Part shown: in pieces, positions 13,566 to 33,878 of the stretch
Numbering within the stretch: the first letter of the stretch is position 1
Layout: each line of letters starts with the position of its first letter
Source: Ylistrum balloti
Lineage: Eukaryota
NCBI RefSeq assembly: GCF_031769215.1
Contig: NW_026782331.1
Coordinates: 124,001-188,000 of the forward strand
Length of the DNA: 64,000 nt
Direction: 5' to 3'
Position numbers and translations under genes: made by a program
The notes under the pieces: generated by a model
Told to the model about the DNA's origin: nothing
Seen by the model: the letters and a program-made list of their open reading frames with translations, nothing else
Database searches by the model: none

Positions 13566-15314
13566 TCACAAAGAAACGATAAAAAGCGAAGGGAAATATA
13601 AAAGCCTTGAATGCCAAAATTGAAGATGGATTATGTAGAATATTCCGTCTAGAAAACAATATACATTACCTAAAAATCATCATTTCATGAATTGATATCT
13701 TTCTATAACGGGTAACTTTGAGATGTCTTTAACATAACGTCGTCTTATTTGTTTTATTTTTCAGTCTGTTAGTACCGAGAACAAAAGATCGCATGTGGGG
13801 AATCCCTTTTGCCTGATTTTGCATATTTCTACTTACATACACGCTCTCTGGTACTGAGTCCCTCTCTTCCTTGCAGAAACATCGATGCACAAGTCAAAAC
13901 ATTCAGATAAACAAATTGATGAAATGCTGTTTAATGCTTGTACTTTAATCATCATTAATTTCCAATTCCCGACATCAAATTTATAGCACAGAATAGAACA
14001 TACATTTCAGTTTTGAAGTAATTCAGTTCATAGTACTGGGTATAATGTAATTATCAACAGTTTTCATATCTACAATACATGATCATTCTTTTCTTTATTT
14101 TCTTCACTTTAGAATTTTCGATAGAATATATATATATATAGGGAACATTTGAAAGATGAATTTATATTGTTACTACACTCTTGTTTTTAAGACATCGAAC
14201 AATCATGTTTTAATAATGTTTATAGTATATTCGAAACTTTAAGAATGGTTAATGTTCACATGAGAATATTTTATTTTCAGAGAAATATGCGTATTCATAT
14301 CGAGGTACTCAGGTGTTTCTTTTTTTTATTATTATTTTTATTGTCTATGTTTTATGCTTATTTCGACACGATAAAAAGATTTTTTAAGTATCATGGAGTT
14401 ACCTCCCTTTACATATTACAGGAAATATGGTATCTGGAAACGTTCAATCAACATTTTTCCTGAAATTATAGTTCATGTTTGAGTTATACAGGTATAGTTG
14501 ATTAGTTATGAAAGCAAATCCTTACATGTATACATATCTATAAGCAACATACAATTACATTAACAGTAGAGAATTAAAAATTGGGTAAACTAAAAATTTA
14601 CCCGGATTTTTCACACAACTGCCATGGTTACCAACCAGAAAAAAACGTTAAATTGCAAAAAATACTACTAATTCCAAACTAATATTACCACTTTAAAGGA
14701 GGAATTTATTTCTGAATACTTGTCTTATAGTTAACAACACTGTCATGGTGACAAATTACTTAGGTTTCAGAAATGTCCAACTCGGAACGCATTTACAACA
14801 TGACCACGTATAGACACTAGGGAAATTTCGCTTCCTGTAAAGCTAGTCTTTGGTGTGTAGACGTAGATTAGAGACAGCCAAAATAGTAATCTCCGACACA
14901 ATGCAAAAAATATTGTTTTTAAAAAGTATGCAACCCCACAATGTCCAATTTAATATGACAACACCAATTTTAGCATAGACATTTTATTTATTTTCTTATT
15001 AAAACCGTTATAGTGGTGTAATCTAATGAACAAAAATAGCACCCATGGCCGCACCGAAAAACTGTGCACTATTACCTTACTACATTCGTGTGTGCTTGAA
15101 ATTTTCGTCAATTATATGAAATACAGTGAAAATATGCGTATTAGTGAACCTTAAGAATGGCTATTGTTCACATGAAATTATTTTTAGATTCGAATAAGGG
15201 ACAATTTTCAGAGAAATATGCGTATACATATGGATTTACCCAGGTTTTTTTTTATTAATTGCATAATTATTTTTTATTGTCTATATTTTTATGCGTATTT
15301 CGAGGTACTATGTG

Positions 15315-15372
15315 CTTTTTTGGGAAAATGTTAGCCCTAAAAAGGGCTGTTTGTGTGGCCCTAGAAAGGGCC
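15315..15372 (-). terminator. Histone-type 3' end signal, copy 1: stem-loop 1 (15372-15357), stem-loop 2 (15348-15333), purine-rich element AAAAAAG (15321-15315)
   Basis: Sense strand: TGA-19 nt ending AAAC-GGCCCT TTCT AGGGCC-ACACAAAC-AGCCCT TTTT AGGGCT-AACATTTTCCC-AAAAAAGCAC. This matches the 6-bp stem/4-nt loop GGYYCT-YYYN-AGRRCC histone consensus with its AAAC/ACA flanks. Confidence 0.8.
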
Positions 15373-15391
15373 GTTTAAGGTGGAGATATAA

Positions 15392-15949
15392 TCAGAGTAC
15401 AAGGTACTCTATATCCGAGATGAACTCCGGTGGAACTGTGAACTCTGTGGCAAAGACGTGAGGGCCGATGTTGTAGAGCCGGAAGCCAGCATTGAGGAAC
15501 CTTCTAACGTCAATATGGACCAGCACTTCCGCACCAGCTCTGACGTAGTTGGGACAGTCGGTGAAATCGACATACGGGCAGCGGTTGCGGTCCAGTCCAT
15601 ACCTGAGGACAGACTCTATATCTCTGGCTTTCATCCCGTGGACAAAGAACGTGAGATTCTCGCCAGAACGGACAGGAATGCCAATCTTTGGTAACCGGAT
15701 GTTGACGCTGTGTCCGTAGGAGGCTCGTATCCATTTGTGGTTGTCGGAGTACACCAATCGCTGTTTGTCGTTGGTAGGGAACACCAATTCATCCAACATG
15801 GCCTTGGACAGCCGGAAGTCACGTAAAATGTGACTGGTTGGGACAAACGCGGTCTCGTCGTCACGCCAGGCGTTTCGGTCATGTCGTAGACGTTTGACAA
15901 CAGCTTTGCTCTTCTTGGTCGACATCTTTCTGCTCAGTCGGGAATCCAT
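15392..15949 (-). CDS. Tpt1/KptA-family RNA 2'-phosphotransferase-like protein, copy 1 (185 aa from the MDSRL start)
   Basis: Motifs in the correct order and spacing: SKAVVKRLRH (SKxxSxxLRH), NDKQR, IRASYGHS (IRAxQ/YGHS), FVHG, GL..R..YV.F, LVHID, VPPEFI. Intronless. Start inferred from the TATA position and the aacATG context. Confidence 0.88.
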   Translation of the reverse strand: MDSRLSRKMSTKKSKAVVKRLRHDRNAWRDDETAFVPTSHILRDFRLSKAMLDELVFPTNDKQRLVYSDNHKWIRASYGHSVNIRLPKIGIPVRSGENLTFFVHGMKARDIESVLRYGLDRNRCPYVDFTDCPNYVRAGAEVLVHIDVRRFLNAGFRLYNIGPHVFATEFTVPPEFISDIEYLVL

Positions 15950-15981
15950 GTTGAATGTAAAGTTGGTGATTTTCGCTTCGA

Positions 15982-16054
15982 TTTTATAGCCATAATCACT
16001 GGAAATGAAAAGAAGGAAAGGCGTGGTCATGTGATGAAATCGAGATTTGATTGG
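15982..16054 (-). promoter_or_regulatory. TATA box (TATAAAA, 15988-15982) and CCAAT box (AGCCAATCA, core 16054-16050) of the Tpt1-like gene; repeated in every unit (CCAAT lost in copy 9)
   Basis: The minus strand reads cgctcAGCCAATCAaatc...ggcTATAAAAtcg, then 32 nt, then ATG. Confidence 0.7.
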
Positions 16055-17644
16055 CTGAGCGTTTTTACCACCTGAATCTAATTGTTAGTTTTCTACATTT
16101 GTACACACGCACACACGGTGGTATTGAGTTTCTCCCTTGTACAAACACACGGTAATTTACCTAAACGGGTCCTTTGATTACACCACCTGCGCAAACATCG
16201 CTGTCTCCAGGTATTGATATAGTACAATGTATACATGTATGTATCGATAGTGTAACTACCCCCGGGCCTTGATGGCTTCACTTGCACTAACACATCTTAG
16301 TCCAGCGTCCTTTAATTATGTTAATGGTTATTCACATCAAAGCAACATCAATGAATCATTAACGTCGGACGGTGACGTGTCGAGAAATCTGACAAAACAA
16401 TTCATGAAAGAAGGTTTAATTCTTTTATTTTCATTGTTATCAATTTTCAATTCTCGGCATGAATTCGTAGCACAGAATAGAACATACATTTCAATTTTGA
16501 ACTAATTCAGTTCATAGTACTGCGTATAATGTAATTATCAACAATTTTCATATCTACAATACATGTACATTGTTTTAAACATCCGTACACATGATATAAA
16601 TGAGCTCTACAACAGTAAGCAGAAATGTATATCGGTTGTAAGAAACGTCATGTACGGCTCAGTATACATCTAATGGTCCAAATTTGTACGTCATTTTTAG
16701 TATCATGGAGTTACCTCCCTTCGCATATTACAGAAACTATGGTGACTGGAAACGGTAAATTAGCATCTTTCCTGAAATTATAGTTCATGTTTGAGTTATA
16801 CAGGTATAGTTGATTAGTTATGAAAGCAAATCCTTACATGTATACATATCTATAAGCAACATACAATTACATTAACAGTAGAGAATTAAAAATTGGGTAA
16901 ACTAAAAATTTCCCCTGATTTTTTACACAACTGCCATGGTTACCAACCCGAAAAAAACGTTAAATTGCAAAAAATACTACTAATTCCAAACTAATATTAC
17001 CACTTTAAAGGAGGAATTTATTTCTGAATACTTGTCTTATAGTTAACAACACTGTCATGGTGACAAATTACTTAGGTTTCAGAAATGTCCAACTCGGAAC
17101 GCATTTACAACATGACCACGTATAGACACTAGTGAAATTTCGCTTCCTGTAAAGCTAGTCTTTGGTGTGTAGACGTAGATTAGAGACAGCCAAAATAGTA
17201 ATCTCCGACACAATGCAAAAAATATTGTTTTTAAAAATTATGCAACCCCGCAATGTCCAATTTAATATGACAACACCAATTTTAGCATAGACATTTTATT
17301 TATTTTCTAATTAACACCGTTATATTGGTGTAATCTAATGAACAAAAATAGCACCCATGGCCGCACCGAAAAACTGTGCACTATTACCTTACTACATTCG
17401 TGTGTGCTTGAAATTTTCGTCAATTATATGAAATACAGTGAAAATATGCGTATTAGTGAACCTTAAGAATGGCTATTGTTCACATGAAATTATTTTTAGA
17501 TTCGAATAAGGGACAATTTTCAGAGAAATATGCGTATACATATGGATTTACCCAGGTTTTTTTTTATTAATTGCATAATTATTTTTTATTGTCTATATTT
17601 TTATGCGTATTTCGAGGTACTATGTGCTTTTTTGGGAAAATGTT

Positions 17645-17684
17645 AGCCCTAAAAAGGGCTGTTTGTGTGGCCCTAGAAAGGGCC
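17645..17684 (-). terminator. Double histone-type stem-loop, copy 2
   Basis: Same sequence as copy 1. Confidence 0.8.
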
Positions 17685-17703
17685 GTTTAAGGTGGAGATA
17701 TAA

Positions 17704-18261
17704 TCAGAGTACAAGGTACTCTATATCCGAGATGAACTCCGGTGGAACTGTGAACTCTGTGGCAAAGACGTGAGGGCCGATGTTGTAGAGCCGGAAGCCA
17801 GCATTGAGGAACCTTCTAACGTCAATATGGACCAGCACTTCCGCACCAGCTCTGACGTAGTTGGGACAGTCGGTGAAATCGACATACGGGCAGCGGTTGC
17901 GGTCCAGTCCATACCTGAGGACAGACTCTATATCTCTGGCTTTCATCCCGTGGACAAAGAACGTGAGATTCTCGCCAGAACGGACAGGAATGCCAATCTT
18001 TGGTAACCGGATGTTGACGCTGTGTCCGTAGGAGGCTCGTATCCATTTGTGGTTGTCGGAGTACACCAATCGCTGTTTGTCGTTGGTAGGGAACACCAAT
18101 TCATCCAACATGGCCTTGGACAGCCGGAAGTCACGTAAAATGTGACTGGTTGGGACAAACGCGGTCTCGTCGTCACGCCAGGCGTTTCGGTCATGTCGTA
18201 GACGTTTGACAACAGCTTTGCTCTTCTTGGTCGACATCTTTCTGCTCAGTCGGGAATCCAT
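17704..18261 (-). CDS. Tpt1/KptA-like protein, copy 2
   Basis: Protein identical to copy 1. Confidence 0.88.
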   Translation of the reverse strand: MDSRLSRKMSTKKSKAVVKRLRHDRNAWRDDETAFVPTSHILRDFRLSKAMLDELVFPTNDKQRLVYSDNHKWIRASYGHSVNIRLPKIGIPVRSGENLTFFVHGMKARDIESVLRYGLDRNRCPYVDFTDCPNYVRAGAEVLVHIDVRRFLNAGFRLYNIGPHVFATEFTVPPEFISDIEYLVL

Positions 18262-19956
18262 GTTGAATGTAAAGTTGGTGATTTTCGCTTCGATTTTATA
18301 GCCATAATCACTGGAAATGAAAAGAAGGAAAGGCGTGGTCATGTGATGAAATCGAGATTTGATTGGCTGAGCGTTTTTACCACCTGAATCTAATTGTTAG
18401 TTTTCTACATTTGTACACACGCACACACGGTGGTATTGAGTTTCTCCCTTGTACAAACACACGGTAATTTACCTAAACGGGTCCTTTGATTACACCACCT
18501 GCGCAAACATCGCTGTCTCCAGGTATTGATATAGTACAATGTATACATGTATGTATCGATAGTGTAACTACCCCCGGGCCTTGATGGCTTCACTTGCACT
18601 AACACATCTTAGTCCAGCGTCCTTTAATTATGTTAATGGTTATTCACATCAAAGCAACATCAATGAATCATTAACGTCGGACGGTGACGTGTCGAGAAAT
18701 CTGACAAAACAATTCATGAAAGAAGGTTTAATTCTTTTATTTTCATTGTTATCAATTTTCAATTCTCGGCATAAATTCGTAGCACAGAATAGAACATACA
18801 TTTCAATTTTGAACTAATTCAGTTCATAGTACTGGGTATAATGTAATTATCAACAATTTTCATATCTACAATACATGTACATTGTTTTAAACATCCGTAC
18901 ACATGATATAAATGAGCTCTACAACAGTAAGCAGAAATGTATATCGGTTGTAAGAAACGTCATGTACGGCTCAGTATACATCTAATGGTCCAAATTTGTA
19001 CGTCATTTTTAGTATCATGGAGTTACCTCCCTTCGCATATTACAGAAACTATGGTGACTGGAAACGGTAAATTAGCATCTTTCCTGAAATTATAGTTCAT
19101 GTTTGAGTTATACAGGTATAGTTGATTAGTTATGAAAGCAAATCCTTACATGTATACATATCTATAAGCAACATACAATTACATTAACAGTAGAGAATTA
19201 AAAATTGGGTAAACTAAAAATTTCCCCTGATTTTTTACACAACTGCCATGGTTACCAACCCGAAAAAAACGTTAAATTGCAAAAAATACTACTAATTCCA
19301 AACTAATATTACCACTTTAAAGGAGGAATTTATTTCTGAATACTTGTCTTATAGTTAACAACACTGTCATGGTGACAAATTACTTAGGTTTCAGAAATGT
19401 CCAACTCGGAACGCATTTACAACATGACCACGTATAGACACTAGTGAAATTTCGCTTCCTGTAAAGCTAGTCTTTGGTGTGTAGACGTAGATTAGAGACA
19501 GCCAAAATAGTAATCTCCGACACAATGCAAAAAATATTGTTTTTAAAAATTATGCAACCCCGCAATGTCCAATTTAATATGACAACACCAATTTTAGCAT
19601 AGACATTTTATTTATTTTCTAATTAACACCGTTATATTGGTGTAATCTAATGAACAAAAATAGCACCCATGGCCGCACCGAAAAACTGTGCACTATTACC
19701 TTACTACATTCGTGTGTGCTTGAAATTTTCGTCAATTATATGAAATACAGTGAAAATATGCGTATTAGTGAACCTTAAGAATGGCTATTGTTCACATGAA
19801 ATTATTTTTAGATTCGAATAAGGGACAATTTTCAGAGAAATATGCGTATACATATGGATTTACCCAGCTTTTTTTTTATTAATTGCATAATTATTTTTTA
19901 TTGTCTATATTTTTATGCGTATTTCGAGGTACTATGTGCTTTTTTGGGAAAATGTT

Positions 19957-19996
19957 AGCCCTAAAAAGGGCTGTTTGTGTGGCCCTAGAAAGGGCC
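19957..19996 (-). terminator. Double histone-type stem-loop, copy 3
   Basis: Same sequence as copy 1; the shifted stop lies 2 nt before SL1. Confidence 0.8.
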
Positions 19997-19998
19997 GT

Positions 19999-20571
19999 TT
20001 AAGGTGGAGATATAATCAGAGTACAAGGTACTCTATCCGAGATGAACTCCGGTGGAACTGTGAACTCTGTGGCAAAGACGTGAGGGCCGATGTTGTAGAG
20101 CCGGAAGCCAGCATTGAGGAACCTTCTAACGTCAATATGGACCAGCACTTCCGCACCAGCTCTGACGTAGTTGGGACAGTCGGTGAAATCGACATACGGG
20201 CAGCGGTTGCGGTCCAGTCCATACCTGAGGACAGACTCTATATCTCTGGCTTTCATCCCGTGGACAAAGAACGTGAGATTCTCGCCAGAACGGACAGGAA
20301 TGCCAATCTTTGGTAACCGGATGTTGACGCTGTGTCCGTAGGAGGCTCGTATCCATTTGTGGTTGTCGGAGTACACCAATCGCTGTTTGTCGTTGGTAGG
20401 GAACACCAATTCATCCAACATGGCCTTGGACAGCCGGAAGTGACGTAAAATGTGACTGGTTGGGACAAACGCGGTCTCGTCGTCACGCCAGGCGTTTCGG
20501 TCATGTCGTAGACGTTTGACAACAGCTTTGCTCTTCTTGGTCGACATCTTTCTGCTCAGTCGGGAATCCAT
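19999..20571 (-). CDS. Tpt1/KptA-like protein, copy 3, with frameshifted C-terminus (SDRVPCTLIISPP)
   Basis: 2-nt deletion (ctctatatccga to ctctatccga) near 20035; D44H relative to copy 1. Confidence 0.8.
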   Translation of the reverse strand: MDSRLSRKMSTKKSKAVVKRLRHDRNAWRDDETAFVPTSHILRHFRLSKAMLDELVFPTNDKQRLVYSDNHKWIRASYGHSVNIRLPKIGIPVRSGENLTFFVHGMKARDIESVLRYGLDRNRCPYVDFTDCPNYVRAGAEVLVHIDVRRFLNAGFRLYNIGPHVFATEFTVPPEFISDRVPCTLIISPP

Positions 20572-22266
20572 GTTGAATGTAAAGTTGGTGATTTTCGCTT
20601 CGATTTTATAGCCATAATCACTGGAAATGAAAAGAAGGAAAGGCGTGGTCATGTGATGAAATCGAGATTTGATTGGCTGAGCGTTTTTACCACCCGAATC
20701 TAATTGTTAGTTTTCTACATTTGTACACACGCACACACGATGGTATTGAGTTCCTCCCTTGTACAAACACACGGTAATTTACCTAAACGGGTCCTTTGAT
20801 TACACCACCTGCGCAAACATCGCTGTCTCCAGGTATTGATATAGTACAATGTATACATGTATGTATCGATAGTGTAACTACCCCCGGGCCTTGATGGCTT
20901 CACTTGCACTAACACATCTTAGTCCAGCGTCCTTTAATTATGTTAATGGTTATTCACATCAAAGCAACATCAATGAATCATTAACGTCGGACGGTGACGT
21001 GTCGAGAAATCTGACAAAACAATTCATGAAAGAAGGTTTAATTCTTTTATTTTCATTGTTATCAATTTTCAATTCTCGGCATAAATTCGTAGCACAGAAT
21101 AGAACATACATTTCAATTTTGAACTAATTCAGTTCATAGTACTGGGTATAATGTAATTATCAACAATTTTCATATCTACAATACATGTACATTGTTTTAA
21201 ACATCCGTACACATGATATAAATGAGCTCTACAACAGTAAGCAGAAATGTATATTGGTTGTAAGAAACGTCATGTACGGCTCAGTATACACCCAATAGTC
21301 CAAATTTGTACGTCATTTTTAGTATCATGGAGTTACCTCCCTTCGCATATTACAGAAACTATGGTATCTGGAAACGTTCAATCAACATTTTTCCTGATAT
21401 TATAGTTCATGTTTGAGCTATACAGGTATATTTGATTAGTTATGAAAGTAAATCCTTACATGTATACATATCTATAAGCAACATACAATTACATTAACAG
21501 TAGAGAATTAAAAATTGGGTAAACTAAAAATTTCCCCTGATTTTTTACACAACTGCCATGGTTACCAACCCGAAAAAAACGTTAAATTGCAAAAAATACT
21601 ACTAATTCCAAACTAATATTACCACTTTAAAGGAGGAATTTATTTCTGAATACTTGTCTTATAGTTAACAACACTGTCATGGTGACAAATTACTTAGGTT
21701 TCAGAAATGTCCAACTCGGAACGCATTTACAACATGACCACGTATAGACACTAGTGAAATTTCGCTTCCTGTAAAGCTAGTCTTTGGTGTGTAGACGTAG
21801 ATTAGAGACAGCCAAAATAGTAATCTCCGACACAATGCAAAAAATATTGTTTTTAAAAATTATGCAACCCCACAATGTCCAATTTAATATGACAACACCA
21901 ATTTTAGCATAGACATTTTATTTATTTTCTAATTAACACCGTTATATTGGTGTAATCTAATGAACAAAAATAGCACCCATGGCCGCACCGAAAAACTGTG
22001 CACTATTACCTTACTACATTCGTGTGTCCTTGAAATTTTCGTCAATTATATGAAATACAGTGTAAATATGCGTATTAGTGAACCTTAAGAATGGCTATTG
22101 TTCACATGAAATTATTTTTAGATTCGAATAAGGGACAATTTTCAGAGAAATATGCGTATACATATGGAGGTACTCAGCTTTTTCTTTTATTAATTTCCTA
22201 ATGGTTTTTATTGTCTATATTTTTATGCGTATTTCGAGGTACTATGTGCTTTTTTGGGAAAATGTT

Positions 22267-22306
22267 AGCCCTAAAAAGGGCTGTTTGTGTGGCCCTAGAA
22301 AGGGCC
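22267..22306 (-). terminator. Double histone-type stem-loop, copy 4
   Basis: Same sequence as copy 1. Confidence 0.8.
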
Positions 22307-22325
22307 GTTTAAGGTGGAGATATAA

Positions 22326-22883
22326 TCAGAGTACAAGGTACTCTATATCCGAGATGAACTCCGGTGGAACTGTGAACTCTGTGGCAAAGACGTGAGGGCC
22401 GATGTTGTAGAGCCGGAAGCCAGCATTGAGGAACCTTCTAACGTCAATATGGACCAGCACTTCCGCACCAGCTCTGACGTAGTTGGGACAGTCGGTGAAA
22501 TCGACATACGGGCAGCGATTGCGGTCCAGTCCATACCTGAGGACAGACTCTATATCTCTGGCTTTCATCCCGTGGACAAAGAACGTGAGATTCTCGCCAG
22601 AACGGACAGGAATGCCAATCTTTGGTAACCGGATGTTGACGCTGTGTCCGTAGGAGGCTCGTATCCATTTGTGGTTGTCGGAGTACACCAATCGCTGTTT
22701 GTCGTTGGTAGGGAACACCAATTCATCCAACATGGCCTTGGACAGCCGGAAGTGACGTAAAATGTGACTGGTTGGGACAAACGCGGTCTCGTCGTCACGC
22801 CAGGCGTTTCGGTCATGTCGTAGACGTTTGACAACAGCTTTGCTCTTCTTGGTCGACATCTTTCTGCTCAGTCGGGAATCCAT
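22326..22883 (-). CDS. Tpt1/KptA-like protein, copy 4
   Basis: Intact; D44H. Confidence 0.88.
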   Translation of the reverse strand: MDSRLSRKMSTKKSKAVVKRLRHDRNAWRDDETAFVPTSHILRHFRLSKAMLDELVFPTNDKQRLVYSDNHKWIRASYGHSVNIRLPKIGIPVRSGENLTFFVHGMKARDIESVLRYGLDRNRCPYVDFTDCPNYVRAGAEVLVHIDVRRFLNAGFRLYNIGPHVFATEFTVPPEFISDIEYLVL

Positions 22884-24578
22884 GTTGAATGTAAAGTTGG
22901 TGATTTTCGCTTCGATTTTATAGCCATAATCACTGGAAATGAAAAGAAGGAAAGGCGTGGTCATGTGATGAAATCGAGATTTGATTGGCTGAGCGTTTTT
23001 ACCACCCGAATCTAATTGTTAGTTTTCTACATTTGTACACACGCACACACGGTGGTATTGAGGTCCTCCCTTGTACAAACACACGGTAATTTACCTAAAC
23101 GGGTCCTTTGATTACACCACCTGCGCAAACATCGCTGTCTCCAGGTATTGATATAGTACAATGTATACATGTATGTATCGATAGTGTAACTACCCCCGGG
23201 CCTTGATGGCTTCACTTGCACTAACACATCTTAGTCCAGCGTCCTTTAATTATGTTAATGGTTATTCACATCAAAGCAACATCAATGAATCATTAACGTC
23301 GGACGGTGACGTGTCGAGAAATCTGACAAAACAATTCATGAAAGAAGGTTTAATTCTTTTATTTTCATTGTTATCAATTTTCAATTCTCGGCATAAATTC
23401 GTAGCACAGAATAGAACATACATTTCAATTTTGAACTAATTCAGTTCATAGTACTGGGTATAATGTAATTATCAACAATTTTCATATCTACAATACATGT
23501 ACATTGTTTTAAACATCCGTACACATGATATAAATGAGCTCTACAACAGTAAGCAGAAATGTATATTGGTTGTAAGAAACGTCATGTACGGCTCAGTATA
23601 CACCCAATAGTCCAAATTTGTACGTCATTTTTAGTATCATGGAGTTACCTCCCTTCGCATATTACAGAAACTATGGTAACTGAAAACGGTAAATTAGCAT
23701 CTTTCCTGAAATTATAGTTCATGTTTGAGTTATACAGGTATAGTTGATTAGTTATGAAAGTACATCCTTACATGTATACATATCTATAAGCAACATACAA
23801 TTACATTAACAGTAGAGAATTAAAAATTGGGTAAACTAAAAATTTCCCCTGATTTTTTACACAACTGCCATGGTTACCAACCCGAAAAAAACGTTAAATT
23901 GCAAAAAATACTACTAATTCCAAACTAATATTACCACTTTAAAGGAGGAATTTATTTCTGAATACTTGTCTTATAGTTAACAACACTGTCATGGTGACAA
24001 ATTACTTAGGTTTCAGAAATGTCCAACTCGGAACGCATTTACAACATGACCACGTATAGACACTAGTGAAATTTCGCTTCCTGTAAAGCTAGTCTTTGGT
24101 GTGTAGACGTAGATTAGAGACAGCCAAAATAGTAATCTCCGACACAATGCAAAAAATATTGTTTTTAAAAAGTATGCAACCCCACAATGTCCAATTTAAT
24201 ATGACAACACCAATTTTAGCATAGACATTTTATTTATTTTCTAATTAAAACCGTTATATTGGTGTAATCTAATGAACAAAAATAGCACCCATGGCCGCAC
24301 CGAAAAACTGTGCACTATTACCTTACTACATTCGTGTGTGCTTGAAATTTTCGTCAATTATATGAAAAACAGTGAAAATATGCGTATTAGTGAACCTTAA
24401 GAATGGCTATTGTTCACATGAAATTATTTTTAGATTCGAATAAGGGACAATTTTCAGAGAAATATGCGTATACATATGGAGGTACTCAGCTTTTTCTTTT
24501 ATTAATTTCCTAATGGTTTTTATTGTCTATATTTTTATGCGTATTTCGAGGTACTATGTGCTTTTTTGGGAAAATGTT

Positions 24579-24618
24579 AGCCCTAAAAAGGGCTGTTTGT
24601 GTGGCCCTAGAAAGGGCC
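24579..24618 (-). terminator. Double histone-type stem-loop, copy 5
   Basis: Same sequence as copy 1. Confidence 0.8.
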
Positions 24619-24637
24619 GTTTAAGGTGGAGATATAA

Positions 24638-25195
24638 TCAGAGTACAAGGTACTCTATATCCGAGATGAACTCCGGTGGAACTGTGAACTCTGTGGCAAA
24701 GACGTGAGGGCCGATGTTGTAGAGCCGGAAGCCAGCATTGAGGAACCTTCTAACGTCAATATGGACCAGCACTTCCGCACCAGCTCTGACGTAGTTGGGA
24801 CAGTCGGTGAAATCGACATACGGGCAGCGATTGCGGTCCAGTCCATACCTGAGGACAGACTCTATATCTCTGGCTTTCATCCCGTGGACAAAGAACGTGA
24901 GATTCTCGCCAGAACGGACAGGAATGCCAATCTTTGGTAACCGGATGTTGACGCTGTGTCCGTAGGAGGCTCGTATCCATTTGTGGTTGTCGGAGTACAC
25001 CAATCGCTGTTTGTCGTTGGTAGGGAACACCAATTCATCCAACATGGCCTTGGACAGCCGGAAGTGACGTAAAATGTGACTGGTTGGGACAAACGCGGTC
25101 TCGTCGTCACGCCAGGCGTTTCGGTCATGTCGTAGACGTTTGACAACAGCTTTGCTCTTCTTGGTCGACATCTTTCTGCTCAGTCGGGAATCCAT
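24638..25195 (-). CDS. Tpt1/KptA-like protein, copy 5
   Basis: Intact; D44H. Confidence 0.88.
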   Translation of the reverse strand: MDSRLSRKMSTKKSKAVVKRLRHDRNAWRDDETAFVPTSHILRHFRLSKAMLDELVFPTNDKQRLVYSDNHKWIRASYGHSVNIRLPKIGIPVRSGENLTFFVHGMKARDIESVLRYGLDRNRCPYVDFTDCPNYVRAGAEVLVHIDVRRFLNAGFRLYNIGPHVFATEFTVPPEFISDIEYLVL

Positions 25196-26889
25196 GTTGA
25201 ATGTAAAGTTGGTGATTTTCGCTTCGATTTTATAGCCATAATCACTGGAAATGAAAAGAAGGAAAGGCGTGGTCATGTGATGAAATCGAGATTTGATTGG
25301 CTGAGCGTTTTTACCACCCGAATCTAATTGTTAGTTTTCTACATTTGTACACACGCACACACGGTGGTATTGAGGTCCTCCCTTGTACAAACACACGGTA
25401 ATTTACCTAAACGGGTCCTTTGATTACACCACCTGCGCAAACATCGCTGTCTCCAGGTATTGATATAGTACAATGTATACATGTATGTATCGATAGTGTA
25501 ACTACCCCCGGGCCTTGATGGCTTCACTTGCACTAACACTTGTTAGTCCAGCGTCCTTTAATTATGTTAATGGTTATTCACATCAAAGCAACATCAATGA
25601 ATCATTAACGTCGGACGGTGACGTGTCGAGAAATCTGACAAAACAATTCATGAAAGAAGGTTTAATTCTTTTATTTTCATTGTTATCAATTTTCAATTCT
25701 CGGCATAAATTCGTAGCACAGAATAGAACATACATTTCAATTTTGAACTAATTCAGTTCATAGTACTGGGTATAATGTAATTATCAACAATTTTCATATC
25801 TACAATACATGTACATTGTTTTAAACATCCGTACACATGATATAAATGAGCTCTACAACAGTAAGCAGAAATGTATATTGGTTGTAAGAAACGTCATGTA
25901 CGGCTCAGTATACACCCAATGGCCCGAACTGTACGTCATTTTCAGCATCATGGAGTTACCTCCCTTCGCATATTACAGAAACTATGGTATCTGAAAACGG
26001 TAAATTAGCATCTTTCCTGAAATTATAGTTCATGTTTGAGTTATACAGGTATAGTTGATTAGTTATGAAAGTAAATCCTTACATGTATACATATCTATAA
26101 GCAACATACAATTACATTAACAGTAGAGAATTAAAAATTGGGTAAACTAAAAATTTCCCCTGATTTTTTACACAACTGCCATGGTTACCAACCCGAAAAA
26201 AACGTTAAATTGCAAAAAATACTACTAATTCCAAACTAATATTACCACTTTAAAGGAGGAATTTATTTCTGAATACTTGTCTTATAGTTAACAACACTGT
26301 CATGGTGACAAATTACTTAGGTTTCAGAAATGTCCAACTCGGAACGCATTTACAACATGACCACGTATAGACACTAGGGAAATTTCGCTTCCTGTAAAGC
26401 TAGTCTTTGGTGTGTAGACGTAGATTAGAGACAGCCAAAATAGTAATCTCCGACACAATGCAAAAAATATTGTTTTTAAAAAGTATGCAACCCCACAATG
26501 TCCAATTTAATATGACAACACCAATTTTAGCATAGACATTTTATTTATTTTCTAATTAAAACCGTTATATTGGTGTAATCTAATGAACAAAAATAGCACC
26601 CATGGCCGCACCGAAAAACTGTGCACTATTACCTTACTACATTCGTGTGTGCTTGAAATTTTCGTCAATTATATGAAATACAGTGAAAATATGCGTATTA
26701 GTGAACCTTAAGAATGGCTATTGTTCACATGAAATTATTTTTAGATTCGAATAAGGGACAATTTTCAGAGAAATATGCGTATACATATGGAGGTACTCAG
26801 CTTTTTCTTTTATTAATTTCCTAATGGTTTTTATTGTCTATATTTTTATGCGTATTTCGAGGTACTATGTGCTTTTTTGGGAAAATGTT

Positions 26890-26929
26890 AGCCCTAAAAA
26901 GGGCTGTTTGTGTGGCCCTAGAAAGGGCC
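26890..26929 (-). terminator. Double histone-type stem-loop, copy 6
   Basis: Same sequence as copy 1. Confidence 0.8.
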
Positions 26930-26948
26930 GTTTAAGGTGGAGATATAA

Positions 26949-27506
26949 TCAGAGTACAAGGTACTCTATATCCGAGATGAACTCCGGTGGAACTGTGAAC
27001 TCTGTGGCAAAGACGTGAGGGCCGATGTTGTAGAGCCGGAAGCCAGCATTGAGGAACCTTCTAACGTCAATATGGACCAGCACTTCCGCACCAGCTCTGA
27101 CGTAGTTGGGACAGTCGGTGAAATCGACATACGGGCAGCGATTGCGGTCCAGTCCATACCTGAGGACAGACTCTATATCTCTGGCTTTCATCCCGTGGAC
27201 AAAGAACGTGAGATTCTCGCCAGAACGGACAGGAATGCCAATCTTTGGTAACCGGATGTTGACGCTGTGTCCGTAGGAGGCTCGTATCCATTTGTGGTTG
27301 TCGGAGTACACCAATCGCTGTTTGTCGTTGGTAGGGAACACCAATTCATCCAACATGGCCTTGGACAGCCGGAAGTGACGTAAAATGTGACTGGTTGGGA
27401 CAAACGCGGTCTCGTCGTCACGCCAGGCGTTTCGGTCATGTCGTAGACGTTTGACAACAGCTTTGCTCTTCTTGGTCGAAATCTTTCTGCTCAGTCGGGA
27501 ATCCAT
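26949..27506 (-). CDS. Tpt1/KptA-like protein, copy 6
   Basis: Intact; M9I, D44H. Confidence 0.88.
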   Translation of the reverse strand: MDSRLSRKISTKKSKAVVKRLRHDRNAWRDDETAFVPTSHILRHFRLSKAMLDELVFPTNDKQRLVYSDNHKWIRASYGHSVNIRLPKIGIPVRSGENLTFFVHGMKARDIESVLRYGLDRNRCPYVDFTDCPNYVRAGAEVLVHIDVRRFLNAGFRLYNIGPHVFATEFTVPPEFISDIEYLVL

Positions 27507-29201
27507 GTTGAATGTAAAGTTGGTGATTTTCGCTTCGATTTTATAGCCATAATCACTGGAAATGAAAAGAAGGAAAGGCGTGGTCATGTGATGAAATCGA
27601 GATTTGATTGGCTGAGCGTTTTTACCACCCGAATCTAATTGTTAGTTTTCTACATTTGTACACACGCACACACGGTGGTATTGAGGTCCTCCCTTGTACA
27701 AACACACGGTAATTTACCTAAACGGGTCCTTTGATTACACCACCTGCGCAAACATCGCTGTCTCCAGGTATTGATATAGTACAATGTATACATGTATGTA
27801 TCGATAGTGTAACTACCCCCGGGCCTTGATGGCTTCACTTGCACTAACACTTGTTAGTCCAGCGTCCTTTAATTATGTTAATGGTTATTCACATCAAAGC
27901 AACATCAATGAATCATTAACGTCGGACGGTGACGTGTCGAGAAATCTGACAAAACAATTCATGAAAGAAGGTTTAATTCTTTTATTTTCATTGTTATCAA
28001 TTTTCAATTCTCGGCATAAATTCGTAGCACAGAATAGAACATACATTTCAATTTTGAACTAATTCAGTTCATAGTACTGGGTATAATGTAATTATCAACA
28101 ATTTTCATATCTACAATACATGTACATTGTTTTAAACATCCGTACACATGATATAAATGAGCTCTACAACAGTAAGCAGAAATGTATATTGGTTGTAAGA
28201 AACGTCATGTACGGCTCAGTATACACTCAATAGTCCAAATTTGTACGTCATTTTTAGTATCATGGAGTTACCTCCCTTTGCATATTACAGAAACTATGGT
28301 AACTGAAAACGGTAAATTAGCATCTTTCCTGAAATTATAGTTCATGTTTGAGTTATACAGGTATAGTTGATTAGTTATGAAAGTAAATCCTTACATGTAT
28401 ACATATCTATAAGCAACATACAATTACATTAACAGTAGAGAATTAAAAATTGGGTAAACTAAAAATTTCCCCTGATTTTTTACACAACTGCCATGGTTAC
28501 CAACCCGAAAAAAACGTTAAATTGCAAAAAATACTACTAATTCCAAACTAATATTACCACTTTAAAGGAGGAATTTATTTCTGAATACTTGTCTTATAGT
28601 TAACAACACTGTCATGGTGACAAATTACTTAGGTTTCAGAAATGTCCAACTCGGAACGCATTTACAACATGACCACGTATAGACACTAGGGAAATTTCGC
28701 TTCCTGTAAAGCTAGTCATTGGTGTGTAGACGCAGATTAGAGACAGCCAAAATAGTTATCTCCGACACAATGCAAAAAATGCTGTTTTTAAAAAGTATGC
28801 AACCCCACAATGTCCAATTTAATATGACAACACCAATTTTAGCATAGACATTTTATTTATTTTCTAATTAAAACCGTTATAGTGGTGTAATCTAATGAAC
28901 AAAAATATCACCCATGGCCGCACCGAAAAACTGTGCACTATTACCTTACTACATTCGTGTGTGCTTGAAATTTTCGTCAATTATATGAAATACAGTGAAA
29001 ATATGCGTATTAGTGAACCTTAAGAATGGCTATTGTTCACATGAAATTATTTTTAGATTCGAATAAGGGACAATTTTCAGAGAAATATGCGTATACATAT
29101 GGAGGTACTCAGCTTTTTCTTTTATTAATTTCCTAATGGTTTTTATTGTCTATATTTTTATGCGTATTTCGAGGTACTATGTGCTTTTTTGGGAAAATGT
29201 T

Positions 29202-29241
29202 AGCCCTAAAAAGGGCTGTTTGTGTGGCCCTAGAAAGGGCC
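29202..29241 (-). terminator. Double histone-type stem-loop, copy 7
   Basis: Same sequence as copy 1. Confidence 0.8.
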
Positions 29242-29260
29242 GTTTAAGGTGGAGATATAA

Positions 29261-29818
29261 TCAGAGTACAAGGTACTCTATATCCGAGATGAACTCCGGT
29301 GGAACTGTGAACTCTGTGGCAAAGACGTGAGGGCCGATGTTGTAGAGCCGGAAGCCAGCATTGAGGAACCTTCTAACGTCAATATGGACCAGCACTTCCG
29401 CACCAGCTCTGACGTAGTTGGGACAGTCGGTGAAATCGACATACGGGCAGCGATTGCGGTCCAGTCCATACCTGAGGACAGACTCTATATCTCTGGCTTT
29501 CATCCCGTGGACAAAGAACGTGAGATTCTCGCCAGAACGGACAGGAATGCCAATCTTTGGTAACCGGATGTTGACGCTGTGTCCGTAGGAGGCTCGTATC
29601 CATTTGTGGTTGTCGGAGTACACCAATCGCTGTTTGTCGTTGGTAGGGAACACCAATTCATCCAACATGGCCTTGGACAGCCGGAAGTGACGTAAAATGT
29701 GACTGGTTGGGACAAACGCGGTCTCGTCGTCACGCCAGGCGTTTCGGTCATGTCGTAGACGTTTGACAACAGCTTTGCTCTTCTTGGTCGACATCTTTCT
29801 GCTCAGTCGGGAATTCAT
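29261..29818 (-). CDS. Tpt1/KptA-like protein, copy 7
   Basis: Intact; D2N, D44H. Confidence 0.88.
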   Translation of the reverse strand: MNSRLSRKMSTKKSKAVVKRLRHDRNAWRDDETAFVPTSHILRHFRLSKAMLDELVFPTNDKQRLVYSDNHKWIRASYGHSVNIRLPKIGIPVRSGENLTFFVHGMKARDIESVLRYGLDRNRCPYVDFTDCPNYVRAGAEVLVHIDVRRFLNAGFRLYNIGPHVFATEFTVPPEFISDIEYLVL

Positions 29819-31514
29819 GTTGAATGTAAAGTTGGTGATTTTCGCTTCGATTTTATAGCCATAATCACTGGAAATGAAAAGAAGGAAAGGCGTGGTCATG
29901 TGATGAAATCGAGATTTGATTGGCTGAGCGTTTTTACCACCCGAATCTAATTGTTAGTTTTGTACATTTGTACACACGCACACACGGTGGTATTGAGTTC
30001 CTCCCTTGTACAAACACACGGTAATTTACCTAAACGGGTCCTTTGATTACACCACCTGCGCAAACATCGCTGTCTCCAGGTATTGATATAGTACAATGTA
30101 TACATGTATGTATCGATAGTGTAACTACCCCCGGGCCTTGATGGCTTCACTTGCACTAACACATCTTAGTCCAGCGTCCTTTAATTATGTTAATGGTTAT
30201 TCACATCAAAGCAACATCAATGAATCCTTAACGTCGGACGGTGACGTGTCGAGAAATCTGACAAAACAATTCATGAAAGAAGGTTTAATTCTTTTATTTT
30301 CATTGTTATCAATTTTCAATTCTCGGCATAAATTCGTAGCACAGAATAGAACATACATTTCAATTTTGAACTAATTCAGTTCATAGTACTGGGTATAATG
30401 TAATTATCAACAATTTTCATATCTACAATACATGTACATTGTTTTAAACATCCGTACACATGATATAAATGAGCTCTACAACAGTAAGCAGAAATGTATA
30501 TTGGTTGTAAGAAACGTCATGTACGGCTCAGTATACACTCAATAGTCCAAATTTGTACGTCATTTTTAGTATCATGGAGTTACCTCCCTTTGCATATTAC
30601 AGAAACTATGGTAACTGAAAACGGTAAATTAGCATCTTTCCTGAAATTATAGTTCATGTTTGAGTTATACAGGTATAGTTGATTAGTTATGAAAGCAAAT
30701 CCTTACATGTATACATATCTATAAGCAACATACAATTACATTAACAGTAGAGAATTAAAAATTTGGTAAACTAAAAATTTCCCCTGATTTTTTACACAAC
30801 TGCCATGGTTACCAACCCGAAAAAAACGTTAAATTGCAAAAAATACTACTAATTCCAAACTAATATTACCATTTAAAGGAGGAATTTATTTCTGAATACT
30901 TGTCTTATAGTTAACAACACTGTCATGGTGACAAATTACTTCGGTTTCAGAAATATCCAACTCGGAACGCATTTACAACATGACCACGTATAGACACTAG
31001 GGAAATTTCGCTTCCTGTAAAGCTAGTCTTTGGTGTGTGTAGACGTAGATTAGAGACAGCCAAAATAGTAATCTCCGACACAATGCAAAAAATATTGTTT
31101 TTAAAAAGTATGCAACCCCACAATGTCCAATTTAATATGACAACACCAATTTTAGCATAGACATTTTATTTATTTTCTAATTAAAACCGTTATAGTGGTG
31201 TAATCTAATGAACAAAAATATCACCCATGGCCGCACCGAAAAACTGTGCACTATTACCTTACTACATTCGTGTGTGCTTGAAATTTTCGTCAATTATATG
31301 AAATACAGTGAAAATATGCGTATTAGTGAACCTTAAGAATGGCTATTGTTCACATGAAATTATTTTTAGATTCGAATAAGGGACAATTTTCAGAGAAATA
31401 TGCGTATACATATGGAGGTACTCAGCTTTTTCTTTTATTAATTTCCTAATGGTTTTTATTGTCTATATTTTTATGCGTATTTCGAGGTACTATGTGCTTT
31501 TTTGGGAAAATGTT

Positions 31515-31554
31515 AGCCCTAAAAAGGGCTGTTTGTGTGGCCCTAAAAAGGGCC
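31515..31554 (-). terminator. Double histone-type stem-loop, copy 8 (SL1 loop TTTT)
   Basis: GGCCCT TTTT AGGGCC; stem unchanged. Confidence 0.82.
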
Positions 31555-31573
31555 GTTTAAGGTGGAGATATAA

Positions 31574-32131
31574 TCAGAGTACAAGGTACTCTATATCCGA
31601 GATGAACTCCGGTGGAACTGTGAACTCTGTGGCAAAGACGTGAGGGCCGATGTTGTAGAGCCGGAAGCCAGCATTGAGGAACCTTCTAACGTCAATATGG
31701 ACCAGCACTTCCGCACCAGCTCTGACGTAGTTGGGACAGTCGGTGAAATCGACATACGGGCAGCGATTGCGGTCCAGTCCATACCTGAGGACAGACTCTA
31801 TATCTCTGGCTTTCATCCCGTGGACAAAGAACGTGAGATTCTCGCCAGAACGGACAGGAATGCCAATCTTTGGTAACCGGATGTTGACGCTGTGTCCGTA
31901 GGAGGCTCGTATCCATTTGTGGTTGTCGGAGTACACCAATCGCTGTTTGTCGTTGGTAGGGAACACCAATTCATCCAACATGGCCTTGGACAGCCGGAAG
32001 TGACGTAAAATGTGACTGGTTGGGACAAACGCGGTCTCGTCGTCACGCCAGGCGTTTCGGTCATGTCGTAGACGTTTGACAACAGCTTTGCTCTTCTTGG
32101 TCGACATCTTTCTGCTCAGTCGGGAATTCAT
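31574..32131 (-). CDS. Tpt1/KptA-like protein, copy 8
   Basis: Intact; D2N, D44H. Confidence 0.88.
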   Translation of the reverse strand: MNSRLSRKMSTKKSKAVVKRLRHDRNAWRDDETAFVPTSHILRHFRLSKAMLDELVFPTNDKQRLVYSDNHKWIRASYGHSVNIRLPKIGIPVRSGENLTFFVHGMKARDIESVLRYGLDRNRCPYVDFTDCPNYVRAGAEVLVHIDVRRFLNAGFRLYNIGPHVFATEFTVPPEFISDIEYLVL

Positions 32132-33819: not shown

Positions 33820-33859
33820 AGCCCTAAAAAGGGCTGTTTGTGTGGCCCTAGAAAGGGCC
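33820..33859 (-). terminator. Double histone-type stem-loop, copy 9
   Basis: Same sequence as copy 1. Confidence 0.8.
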
Positions 33860-33878
33860 GTTTAAGGTGGAGATATAA

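What the first reader, a model, noticed from the sequence alone, without database searches (positions are those of the whole stretch)
15392..15949. Divergent Tpt1/KptA-like protein: RNA-lobe residues kept, NAD+-lobe motifs altered
Seen (numbering from MDSRL): R22, H23, K62-Q-R64 and IRASYGHS are retained. The canonical HGT reads HGM, and RxxVHL reads R123-C-P-Y-V-D-F, so the expected fourth catalytic Arg position is Cys124 and the His is Asp128. Established: Tpt1/TRPT1 use an Arg-His-Arg-Arg tetrad and NAD+ to remove RNA 2'-phosphate, and some members ADP-ribosylate 5'-phosphate ends of RNA or DNA. Inference: this is an additional paralog rather than the housekeeping TRPT1. It could have changed chemistry, be a 2'-phospho-RNA binder, or act as an antiviral/anti-TE effector. 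Its compact 185-aa intronless form and YGHS motif would fit retroposition or horizontal/viral acquisition.
Basis: partly seen in the sequence, partly recalled or inferred. Interest (0 to 1): 0.72.

Follow-up and report, generated by a model that had tools for sequence, protein, structure and literature searches.

The report
Histone-style array of altered Tpt1 genes
A scallop genome carries ten back-to-back, intron-free copies of a gene related to the RNA-repair enzyme Tpt1. Its NAD-binding pocket has been rebuilt and its control signals copy those of histone genes. Other scallops keep the same arrangement, so it is probably a working gene with a new job.

Summary
**Observation: confirmed.** The 185-aa ORF (15392-15949, minus strand) is a real Tpt1/KptA homolog (Pfam PF01885, 52.9 bits). 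It is predicted with confidence to have the Tpt1 fold. R22, H23, K62, R64 and Y78-G-H-S are kept. HGT reads HGM. The invariant fourth Arg is Cys124, and the VHL His is Asp128.

- This is copy 1 of ten near-identical tandem copies (2.3-kb units, window 14382-37380).
- Each copy has a CCAAT/TATA promoter and a complete histone-type 3' cassette: two stem-loops, an HDE-like purine run and a lineage-specific downstream motif.
- A model trained only on this genome's own histone genes hits exactly once after each copy.

**Conservation.**
- Pecten maximus and Argopecten irradians have the same arrays.
- dN/dS is 0.15-0.27 and is equal in both lobes.
- The three pocket substitutions are fixed across the clade.
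- A canonical multi-exon TRPT1 lies elsewhere in the genome.

**Best reading.** This is a scallop-specific paralog, probably expressed like a histone. It has probably lost or changed the canonical NAD+ chemistry but kept the nucleic-acid phosphate clamp.

**Gaps.** No RNA evidence was obtainable.

**Earlier scan notes.** The scan noted this window's histone-like organisation (s1-234335, s1-234450). It also noted another non-histone array with histone-type ends on other DNA of this genome (s1-262736).

The parts
14382..37380 (-). Tandem array: ten units of about 2312 bp, each holding one Tpt1-like gene and about 1.5 kb of AT-rich spacer
   Evidence: blastn of one unit against the window gives units 97.4-100% identical. 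ORF spacings are 2287-2327 bp. PF01885 hits the genome at ten places on C474.
15392..15949 (-). Copy 1 coding sequence (the finding), 185 aa
17704..18261 (-). Copy 2 coding sequence, 185 aa, identical protein to copy 1
19999..20571 (-). Copy 3 coding sequence, 190 aa. A 17-nt deletion removes the normal stop, and the frame ends at the TAA just before stem-loop 1.
22326..22883 (-). Copy 4 coding sequence
24638..25195 (-). Copy 5 coding sequence
26949..27506 (-). Copy 6 coding sequence (M9I)
29261..29818 (-). Copy 7 coding sequence (D2N)
31574..32131 (-). Copy 8 coding sequence
33879..34436 (-). Copy 9 coding sequence. Its promoter has a 23-nt deletion, and CCAAT reads CCTAT.
36166..36723 (-). 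Copy 10 coding sequence (edge copy, the most diverged)
16044..16056 (-). CCAAT box of copy 1 (repeated in every unit), invariant in five scallop sequences
16020..16028 (-). GACCACGCC box of copy 1, conserved between species
15980..15991 (-). TATA box (GGCTATAAAATC), starting 39 nt before the ATG. It implies a very short 5' UTR.
15357..15372 (-). Stem-loop 1: 6-bp stem GGCCCT/AGGGCC with a 4-nt loop, flanked by AAAC and ACA. The stem is the same as in this genome's core histone genes.
15333..15348 (-). Stem-loop 2 (AGCCCT/AGGGCT), like this genome's H1 stem-loop. It sits at the canonical distance from the downstream elements.
15314..15324 (-). Purine run CCCAAAAAAGC, in the position of the histone downstream element (U7 site) and shared with this genome's histone genes
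15292..15304 (-). CTCGAAATACGCA motif, present after every histone gene of this genome; function unknown
15277..15358 (-). Full-length match of copy 1 to model R1, which was built only from the 3' flanks of this genome's H4, H2B, H2A, H3 and H1
   Evidence: 46.5 bits, E 1.6e-7. There are exactly ten such matches in the window, one after each copy.

Best explanation
The ORF is copy 1 of a ten-copy tandem array of an intronless Tpt1/KptA-family paralog specific to scallops.

**Expression unit.** Each 2.3-kb unit is built like a replication-dependent histone gene. It has a CCAAT box, a GC box and a TATA box, a very short leader and no intron. Its 3' cassette has two histone-type stem-loops, an HDE-like purine run and the same downstream motif that follows this genome's histone genes. 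The likely mode of expression is therefore histone-like. The message would be cut after stem-loop 2 by the SLBP/U7 pathway. It would be made in bulk from many copies in dividing or early embryonic cells.

**Protein.** It keeps the two-lobe Tpt1 fold and the phosphate clamp of the RNA lobe (R22, H23, K62, R64, Y78). It has replaced three side chains that hold NAD+ in solved Tpt1 enzymes:
- Thr of HGT, now Met or Ile;
- the essential fourth Arg, now Cys or Ser;
- the VHL His, now Asp or Glu.

Both lobes are under equal purifying selection. I therefore read it as a neofunctionalised protein. It still grips a phosphorylated nucleic-acid end or branch. It no longer performs the canonical NAD+-dependent 2'-phosphate removal, and its second lobe binds a different or differently held ligand.

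**Shown:** homology, predicted fold, the substitutions, the array, conservation in three scallop genera, purifying selection, and the sequence match of the signals to this genome's histone genes.

**Inferred:** use of the stem-loops, timing of expression, loss of the canonical activity, and nucleic-acid binding.
For: - **Family and fold.** PF01885 scores 52.9 bits. The AlphaFold2 model has pLDDT 92.8. Its best Foldseek matches are all Tpt1/KptA/TRPT1, with TM 0.72-0.82 to ligand-bound forms.
- **Substitutions.** These are fixed in five of five clade members against 61-64 of 64 other family members.
- **Meaning of the substitutions.** In Thermococcus Tpt1, the Arg118Ala mutant (the column of C124) gives no product at all (PMC12678800). 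In Pyrococcus Tpt1, Thr97 binds the AMP ribose. [quoted passage not shown] His119 hydrogen-bonds the NMN ribose 2'-OH (PMC10622864).
- **Selection.** dN/dS is 0.15-0.27 between species. It is 0.184 for the N lobe and 0.178 for the C lobe. Within the array, 6 of 558 coding columns vary, against 108 of 1626 in the rest of the unit, which is mostly spacer.
- **Array conserved.** P. maximus has at least ten units on one contig and more than 20 protein entries on three contigs. A. irradians has units of about 2.23 kb.
- **Signals conserved between species.** Spacers are not conserved.
- **Histone-type 3' end.** The stem-loop pair folds at -22 kcal/mol, z -5.55. Model R1, trained only on this genome's histone genes, gives ten hits of 46.5 bits in the window, 57.9 bits in P. 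maximus and 50.8 bits in A. irradians. The 21-nt stem-loop pattern occurs 63 times in 648 Mb and never for the reversed control.
- **Machinery.** An SLBP gene is present.
- **Sister paralogs.** Their stem-loops pass Rfam's Histone3 gathering score at 35.7-39.4 bits.
- **Separate housekeeping gene.** A canonical TRPT1 lies on C162.
Against: - No RNA evidence. The only public run holding the stretch behaves as DNA, with contigs that also cover the spacer. Expression, the 3' end and its timing are therefore unproven.
- In the window, Rfam Histone3 scores only 22.1 and 11.1 bits, below its gathering score of 34.
- AATAAA signals lie 55-80 nt after stem-loop 2 in this species, so polyadenylated transcripts are possible.
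- R123 is invariant in the clade and sits one residue before the lost Arg. In the Aeropyrum enzyme, an Arg at that neighbouring position touches the RNA. It might rescue catalysis.
- H104, G105 and R137 of the NAD+ pocket are kept, which fits a still-functional nucleotide pocket.
- U7 snRNA could not be found with the tool (the search is uninformative).
- Several A. irradians units are frameshifted.
Confidence: 0.55

Rival explanations
1. It is still an active NAD+-dependent enzyme. R123 swings in to replace the missing tetrad arginine, and Asp/Glu128 accepts the hydrogen bond from the NMN ribose 2'-OH. The protein would then remove 2'-phosphates, or more likely ADP-ribosylate 5'-phosphate ends of RNA or DNA in one step, possibly with new substrate preference.
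For: R123 is invariant in the clade, where the rest of the family has K, S, N, T or R. H104, G105 and R137 are kept. The C lobe is as constrained as the N lobe. Tpt1 enzymes are known to cap 5'-phosphate ends with ADP-ribose (PMC6182162 and PMC12678800).
Against: Mutating the fourth Arg abolishes all product formation in Thermococcus Tpt1, and this Arg is essential in the yeast, E. coli and Runella enzymes (PMC10622864). Three NAD+ contacts are lost together, including the Thr that holds the AMP ribose. The stem branch is very long, 1.3-1.4 substitutions per site, which points to a change of function.
Confidence: 0.27
2. The array is a selfish or neutral amplified repeat (satellite-like, or carried by a mobile element). 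The ORFs are intact only because amplification and homogenisation are recent.
For: Units are 97-100% identical. The related paralogs L002 and L003 sit next to a GDSL-like ORF of a kind that I recall from LINE ORF1 proteins (the LINE link is from memory). A. irradians has several broken units. There is a degenerate solo copy at C474:269 kb and pieces on C547.
Against: dN/dS is 0.15-0.27 across species with dS 0.5-0.9. The promoter, ORF and 3' cassette are conserved while spacers are not alignable. The array stands in three genera. No transposase, reverse transcriptase or terminal repeats occur in the unit, and the spacer has no ORF of 80 aa or more.
Confidence: 0.06
3. The clade entered scallops by horizontal transfer from a bacterium, archaeon or virus, and is not derived from the bivalve intronless Tpt1-like genes. 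This concerns origin only and is compatible with either functional reading.
For: An AU test does not reject grouping the clade with the bacterial-type side (p 0.82). The clade lacks the four-residue insert before the C-terminal VPP motif that the bivalve and eukaryote-like members share. It has the Tyr of YGHS, as archaeal enzymes do.
Against: Quick and careful maximum-likelihood trees both nest it in the bivalve intronless clade (96*, then 95/86*). Those paralogs share the rare histone-type 3' cassette. No close non-scallop relative exists among 1.84 billion representatives; the next hit is 38% identical.
Confidence: 0.12

Closest known systems
Tpt1 / KptA / TRPT1 RNA 2'-phosphotransferases (Pfam PF01885)
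   Same: Homologous over the whole length with the same predicted two-lobe fold. It has the same RNA-lobe phosphate clamp (Arg-His, Lys-x-Arg, Tyr-Gly-His-Ser), the same HG of the NAD+ pocket and the distal Arg (R137).
   Different: The fourth Arg of the catalytic tetrad is Cys or Ser, the VHL His is Asp or Glu, and the HGT Thr is Met or Ile. It is multi-copy in a tandem array with histone-type signals. The ordinary TRPT1 of the same genome is a single multi-exon gene.
Replication-dependent histone gene repeats (this genome's core quartet array with 4.9-kb units; H1 array with 2.46-kb units)
   Same: Intronless, tandemly repeated and homogenised, with CCAAT/TATA promoters and short leaders. 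The 3' cassette has the same stem sequence, the same purine run and the same CTCGAAA..ACGCA motif.
   Different: It encodes an enzyme-family protein, not a histone. It has two stem-loops in a row. It is not linked to the histone arrays in the assembly. No sequence similarity to histone units exists outside the 3' cassette.
Bivalve intronless Tpt1-like paralogs (this genome's L001-L003; P. maximus LOC117340572; Ylistrum balloti XP_060077369; Pinctada imbricata KAK3083395)
   Same: They are about 180 aa, intronless and basic. The scallop ones also end in a histone-type stem-loop that passes Rfam's threshold. They are the nearest relatives in the trees.
   Different: They share only 25-30% identity. 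They keep the fourth Arg and the VHF His (HAT or HGT), are single or low copy rather than in long arrays, and in two of this genome's loci are paired with a GDSL-like gene. The Pinctada gene has no stem-loop.
Inactive ADP-ribosyltransferase-fold proteins that act as nucleic-acid binders, such as PARP13/ZAP (from memory, not tested here)
   Same: It has an ART-type fold with altered NAD+-contacting residues, retained under selection.
   Different: It belongs to a different ART clade with a different architecture. The analogy concerns the mode of evolution only.

Membership tests
Tpt1/KptA/TRPT1 (PF01885) | Profile match above the curated threshold over the whole domain | tested here: met
   52.9 bits against a cut-off of 26, covering positions 4-172 of 177
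Tpt1/KptA/TRPT1 (PF01885) | Two-lobe fold: winged-helix RNA lobe plus ART-type NAD+ lobe | tested here: met
   AlphaFold2 pLDDT 92.8, pTM 0.85. The top 22 Foldseek PDB hits are all Tpt1/KptA/TRPT1, with TM up to 0.82.
Tpt1/KptA/TRPT1 (PF01885) | [quoted passage not shown] | tested here: not met
   R22, H23 and R64 are present. The fourth position is C124 (Ser in A. irradians), against Arg in 64 of 64 other members.
Tpt1/KptA/TRPT1 (PF01885) | NAD+ pocket motifs HGT and VHL (the ART H-H-h triad) | tested here: not met
   It reads H104-G105-M106 (Ile in other scallops) and V127-D128-F129 (Glu in P. maximus).
Tpt1/KptA/TRPT1 (PF01885) | NAD+-dependent removal of RNA 2'-phosphate, or ADP-ribosylation of 5'-phosphate ends | not testable with these tools
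   Needs recombinant protein and yeast tpt1-delta complementation.
Replication-dependent histone-type gene (expression class) | Conserved 3' stem-loop of the histone type | tested here: inconclusive
   Rfam Histone3 scores 22.1 and 11.1 bits in the window, below the gathering score of 34, and 29.6 bits in P. maximus. A model trained on this genome's histone genes gives 46.5 bits, E 1.6e-7, ten times. The stem is identical to this genome's core histone stem.
Replication-dependent histone-type gene (expression class) | Purine-rich downstream element at the right distance | tested here: met
   CCCAAAAAAGC lies 9 nt after stem-loop 2 and aligns with CAAAAAG of this genome's H4, H2B and H3. Pairing with U7 was not tested because U7 was not found.
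Replication-dependent histone-type gene (expression class) | Intronless, tandemly repeated, CCAAT/TATA promoter | tested here: met
Replication-dependent histone-type gene (expression class) | Non-polyadenylated mRNA ending after the stem-loop; SLBP binding; S-phase coupling | not testable with these tools
   No RNA run holds the stretch. An SLBP gene exists in the genome.
Replication-dependent histone-type gene (expression class) | Encodes a histone | tested here: not met
   The product is a PF01885 protein with no histone-fold match.

The most novel reading that the evidence does not exclude
Scallops run a small regulon of non-histone genes through the histone mRNA pathway, with SLBP/U7 processing and no poly(A) tail. 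The regulon would include two lineages of Tpt1-like genes, a GDSL-like hydrolase and at least two unnamed small proteins. The amplified Tpt1-like protein would then be a replication- or embryo-coupled factor made in histone-like amounts. It would use a rebuilt NAD+/ADP-ribose pocket for a chemistry or a reading function not known in the Tpt1 family, for example marking or binding phosphorylated nucleic-acid ends on replicating chromatin.
Probability: 0.35. Interest if true: 0.9.

Novelty: new variant of a known kind. Interest (0 to 1): 0.78.

Why it matters
[quoted passage not shown] A conserved enzyme-family gene that carries the whole histone-type cassette and is amplified like a histone gene would be an exception. 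It could be tested directly with RNA from scallop gonads or embryos.

For the Tpt1 field, the role of this enzyme family in animals is unsettled, because animal tRNA splicing leaves no junction 2'-phosphate. This clade offers a natural experiment. It has lost an arginine that is essential in every tested enzyme, yet both lobes remain under purifying selection.

If the finding is only what is shown here, it is still a lineage-specific multi-copy gene family that database annotation labels 'probable RNA 2'-phosphotransferase'. That name is probably wrong as a statement of activity.

Tried and rejected
- **RNA evidence.** The run search returned one run of unknown kind. When laid on the window, its contigs also cover the spacer, so it behaves as DNA and says nothing on expression.
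- **Rfam at gathering threshold.** No hit anywhere in the window.
- **U7 snRNA (RF00066).** Nothing was scored in this genome or in the controls, so the result is uninformative.
- **tRNA in this genome's units.** None by ARAGORN or Rfam, unlike the other scallops.
- **Similarity of the unit to this genome's H1 or core histone units outside the 3' cassette.** None.
- **GDSL-like and the two unnamed stem-loop gene classes in the window or in the orthologous arrays.** None.
- **Pfam and Atlas look-ups for the two unnamed classes.** Nothing usable.
- **Literature.** Searches for non-histone genes with histone stem-loops, and for TRPT1 in scallops, found no report in the held library.
- **Sole housekeeping TRPT1.** Rejected.
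- **The 212-aa reading frame from the upstream ATG.** Rejected, because the TATA box lies inside it and the frame is broken by 1-nt indels in A. irradians.
- **Phylogenetic placement.** It could not be settled: the trees nest the clade among bivalve paralogs, but an AU test does not reject the alternative.

Full report
**1.

The minus-strand ORF at 15392-15949 encodes 185 aa from MDSRL. It matches Pfam PF01885 (RNA 2'-phosphotransferase, Tpt1/KptA) at 52.9 bits against a cut-off of 26, over nearly the whole profile. It also matches solved Tpt1/KptA chains by sequence.

An AlphaFold2 model built on a 69-sequence alignment has mean pLDDT 92.8. Its 22 significant Foldseek matches in the PDB are all Tpt1, KptA or TRPT1, with TM up to 0.82.

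The residue claims are correct:
- R22, H23, K62, R64, Y78-G-H-S, H104, G105 and R137 are kept.
- The column of C124 is Arg in 64 of 64 family members outside the scallop clade.
- The column of D128 is His in 61 of 64.
- The column of M106 is Thr in 63 of 64.

HMMER alignments to the Runella, Thermococcus and Pyrococcus enzymes give the same register. R123 falls one residue before the lost Arg.

**2. It is not a lone gene.**

PF01885 hits this genome (648.5 Mb, 1372 contigs) at ten places on the window's contig. The window holds ten open copies on the minus strand, spaced 2287-2327 bp apart. They form an array from 14382 to 37380 whose units are 97.4-100% identical. Inner units are more alike than edge units.

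Across nine full units, 6 of 558 coding columns vary. In the rest of the unit, which is mostly spacer, 108 of 1626 vary. The core promoter and 3' cassette are almost invariant.

Some copies carry private changes:
- Copy 3 has a 17-nt deletion that extends the protein to 190 aa.
- Copy 9 has a 23-nt promoter deletion and a mutated CCAAT box.

The spacer has no ORF of 80 aa or more.

**3. The housekeeping gene is elsewhere.**

Contig C162 carries a multi-exon gene spread over about 8.4 kb. Its exons encode the canonical K-G-R, HGT and R-T-H-I-H-F motifs.

The genome also has three intronless Tpt1-like ORFs of another type (L001-L003, 75 bits). It has a degenerate solo copy of the array type at C474:269 kb, and broken pieces on C547.

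**4. The organism and the relatives.**

The closest proteins are 'probable RNA 2'-phosphotransferase' of Pecten maximus (76% identity) and Argopecten irradians (68%), plus two unnamed contigs. A Ylistrum balloti protein is identical to this genome's L003 ORF, so the genome is that species or one very near it.

In a scan of 1.84 billion representatives, only 179 proteins reach E 0.001. The next relative after the scallop clade is 38% identical.

Quick and careful maximum-likelihood trees both show the following:
- The five array-type sequences form one clade (100/100).
- The clade sits on a very long stem of 1.3-1.4 substitutions per site.
- It is nested in a clade of bivalve intronless Tpt1-like genes (96*, then 95/86*).
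- That clade lies on the side of the tree that holds an animal TRPT1.

An AU test does not reject moving the clade to the bacterial-type side (p 0.82). The origin is therefore probable, not proven.

**5. The array is old and selected.**

P. maximus has the same arrangement. One 29.6-kb contig holds at least ten units of about 2.0 kb, and more than 20 protein entries lie on three contigs. A. irradians has units of about 2.23 kb with an internal inversion. Some of its units are intact and several are frameshifted.

Between species, only about 100 nt of promoter, the ORF and the 3' cassette align, at 76-80% identity. Spacers do not align.

Pairwise dN/dS is 0.15-0.27 with dS 0.5-0.9. It is the same in the RNA lobe (0.184) and the NAD+ lobe (0.178). 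The three pocket substitutions and R123 are fixed in all five clade members. This is a constrained new state, not decay.

**6. The gene is dressed as a histone gene.**

An earlier scan note on this window (s1-234450) pointed to two stem-loops just after the stop codon, and I tested this.

Stem-loop 1 (15357-15372) has the same stem as this genome's H4, H2B, H2A and H3 genes, with the AAAC and ACA flanks. Stem-loop 2 (15333-15348) resembles this genome's H1 stem-loop. After stem-loop 2 come a purine run and a CTCGAAATACGCA motif, both shared with all five histone gene types of this genome. The pair folds at -22 kcal/mol, z -5.55.

Rfam's Histone3 model reaches only 22.1 and 11.1 bits here, and 29.6 bits in P. 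maximus. These are under its gathering score of 34.

To test the point without leaning on the gene itself, I built a model from the 3' flanks of this genome's five histone genes only. Its results:
- It finds exactly ten full-length matches in the 64-kb window, each 46.5 bits, E 1.6e-7, one after each copy.
- All matches are anchored on stem-loop 2.
- It scores 57.9 bits in P. maximus and 50.8 bits in A. irradians.
- It finds nothing at the Pinctada paralog.

The 21-nt stem-loop pattern occurs 63 times in the genome and never for the reversed control.

Upstream, a CCAAT box, a GACCACGCC box and a TATA box starting 39 nt before the ATG are conserved in five scallop sequences. This also shows that the longer 212-aa frame is not the product. 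An SLBP gene is present. U7 could not be found with the tool.

**7. It is not the only such gene.**

This genome's other intronless Tpt1-like genes (L001-L003) and P. maximus LOC117340572 end in stem-loops that pass Rfam's threshold at 35.7-39.4 bits.

The same holds, or nearly holds, for other genes:
- a GDSL-like hydrolase ORF next to L002 and L003 and upstream of L001;
- two unnamed ORF classes.

Another scan report describes a 26-copy array of a small non-histone gene with histone-type ends elsewhere in this genome (s1-262736). I did not check that array.

The histone-type end therefore marks a small set of non-histone genes in scallops. The Pinctada paralog lacks it.

**8. What the protein probably does.**

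Published structures and mutants give the meaning of the changed residues.

In Pyrococcus Tpt1 (PMC10622864):
- Thr97 of HGT binds the AMP ribose.
- His119 of VHL hydrogen-bonds the NMN ribose 2'-OH and packs on the nicotinamide.

In Thermococcus Tpt1, the Arg118Ala mutant makes no intermediate and no product. Mutants of the RNA-lobe residues stall after step 1 (PMC12678800).

The scallop clade has lost all three NAD+ contacts. It keeps the RNA-lobe clamp, the HG pair and the distal Arg. The canonical two-step reaction is therefore unlikely.

The equal constraint on both lobes argues that the second lobe still binds something. An acidic residue now stands where the His touched the ribose, and a clade-specific Arg sits next to the lost one. 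Either change could support altered chemistry. I cannot decide between a binder and an altered enzyme from sequence. I rate loss of the canonical activity at about 0.7.

**9. Limits.**

No RNA data could be reached. The single run that holds the stretch behaves as DNA. Its word depth of about 260-330 in the array against about 7 in the flank hints that the real array is larger than ten copies. The tool warns that depth is not copy number.

Use of the stem-loops, timing of expression and any activity are all inferences. AATAAA signals downstream in this species leave room for polyadenylated forms.

No literature in the held library reports a non-histone gene with this cassette, or this Tpt1 clade. 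That is absence in that library only.

Noticed in passing
L024:10399-10471 (P. maximus), L026 (nine sites, A. irradians), L028:371-443: In the other scallops, every unit of the array also carries a tRNA-Arg(CCT) gene (63.8 bits) on the same strand, a few hundred nt to about 1 kb after the Tpt1-like ORF. This genome's array has none, although identical tRNA-Arg(CCT) genes exist elsewhere in it (a C792 cluster).
   Followed up: partly
L002:638-1228 and L003:608-1200; L054:1696-2306; L044 (broken): A GDSL/SGNH-like hydrolase ORF of about 175 aa has its own histone-type stem-loop (36.6-36.9 bits, above Rfam's threshold). It lies directly upstream of the L002 and L003 Tpt1-like genes and 2.7 kb upstream of L001.
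   Followed up: partly
L048, L049, L050, L046, L047, L053 (contigs C286, C508, C1164, C250): A family of small ORFs of about 80-93 aa, starting MA.P.AIF.YDFG, is followed within about 30 nt by a histone-type cassette. It has no Pfam or Atlas match.
   Followed up: partly
L051:244-783 (-), L052:235-633 (-) (contigs C240, C272): A second unnamed family of 133-180 aa, with a conserved RFRRSCEQIVLLNQR ... FRYNLRLKLA core, also ends in a histone-type stem-loop (32.5 and 36.4 bits). It has no Pfam match.
   Followed up: partly
L025 (C1354:36000-41500), L031 (C879): All five histone gene types of this genome share a CTCGAAA(A)TACGCA motif about 40-50 nt after the stem-loop, beyond the purine run. Its role is unknown to me.
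   Followed up: no
L016:1348-1890 (C474 near 269 kb); L004 and L017 (C547): A degenerate solo copy of the array-type gene, with an internal deletion and a stop, lies 81 kb beyond the window. Further broken Tpt1-like pieces lie on C547.
   Followed up: partly
window 14000-18500, run X1: In the one public run that holds the stretch, contigs of the array have word depth of about 260-330 against about 7 for the flanking unique DNA. The assembled ten copies may understate the array. The tool warns that depth is not copy number.
   Followed up: no
window 46108-49979; 41909-44183; 5141-6050: Large minisatellites occur here: a 31-nt unit repeated 126 times (C/A-rich, strong skew), a 44-nt unit over 2.3 kb, and a 40-nt unit repeated 23 times.
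   Followed up: no
window 11088-12002 (+): A 304-aa ORF built on a 24-nt (144-nt higher-order) tandem repeat has a Pfam DUF3432 match (40 bits).
   Followed up: no
L003:1495-2034: This ORF is identical to Ylistrum balloti XP_060077369.1, which suggests that the window's genome is that species or the same assembly.
   Followed up: partly
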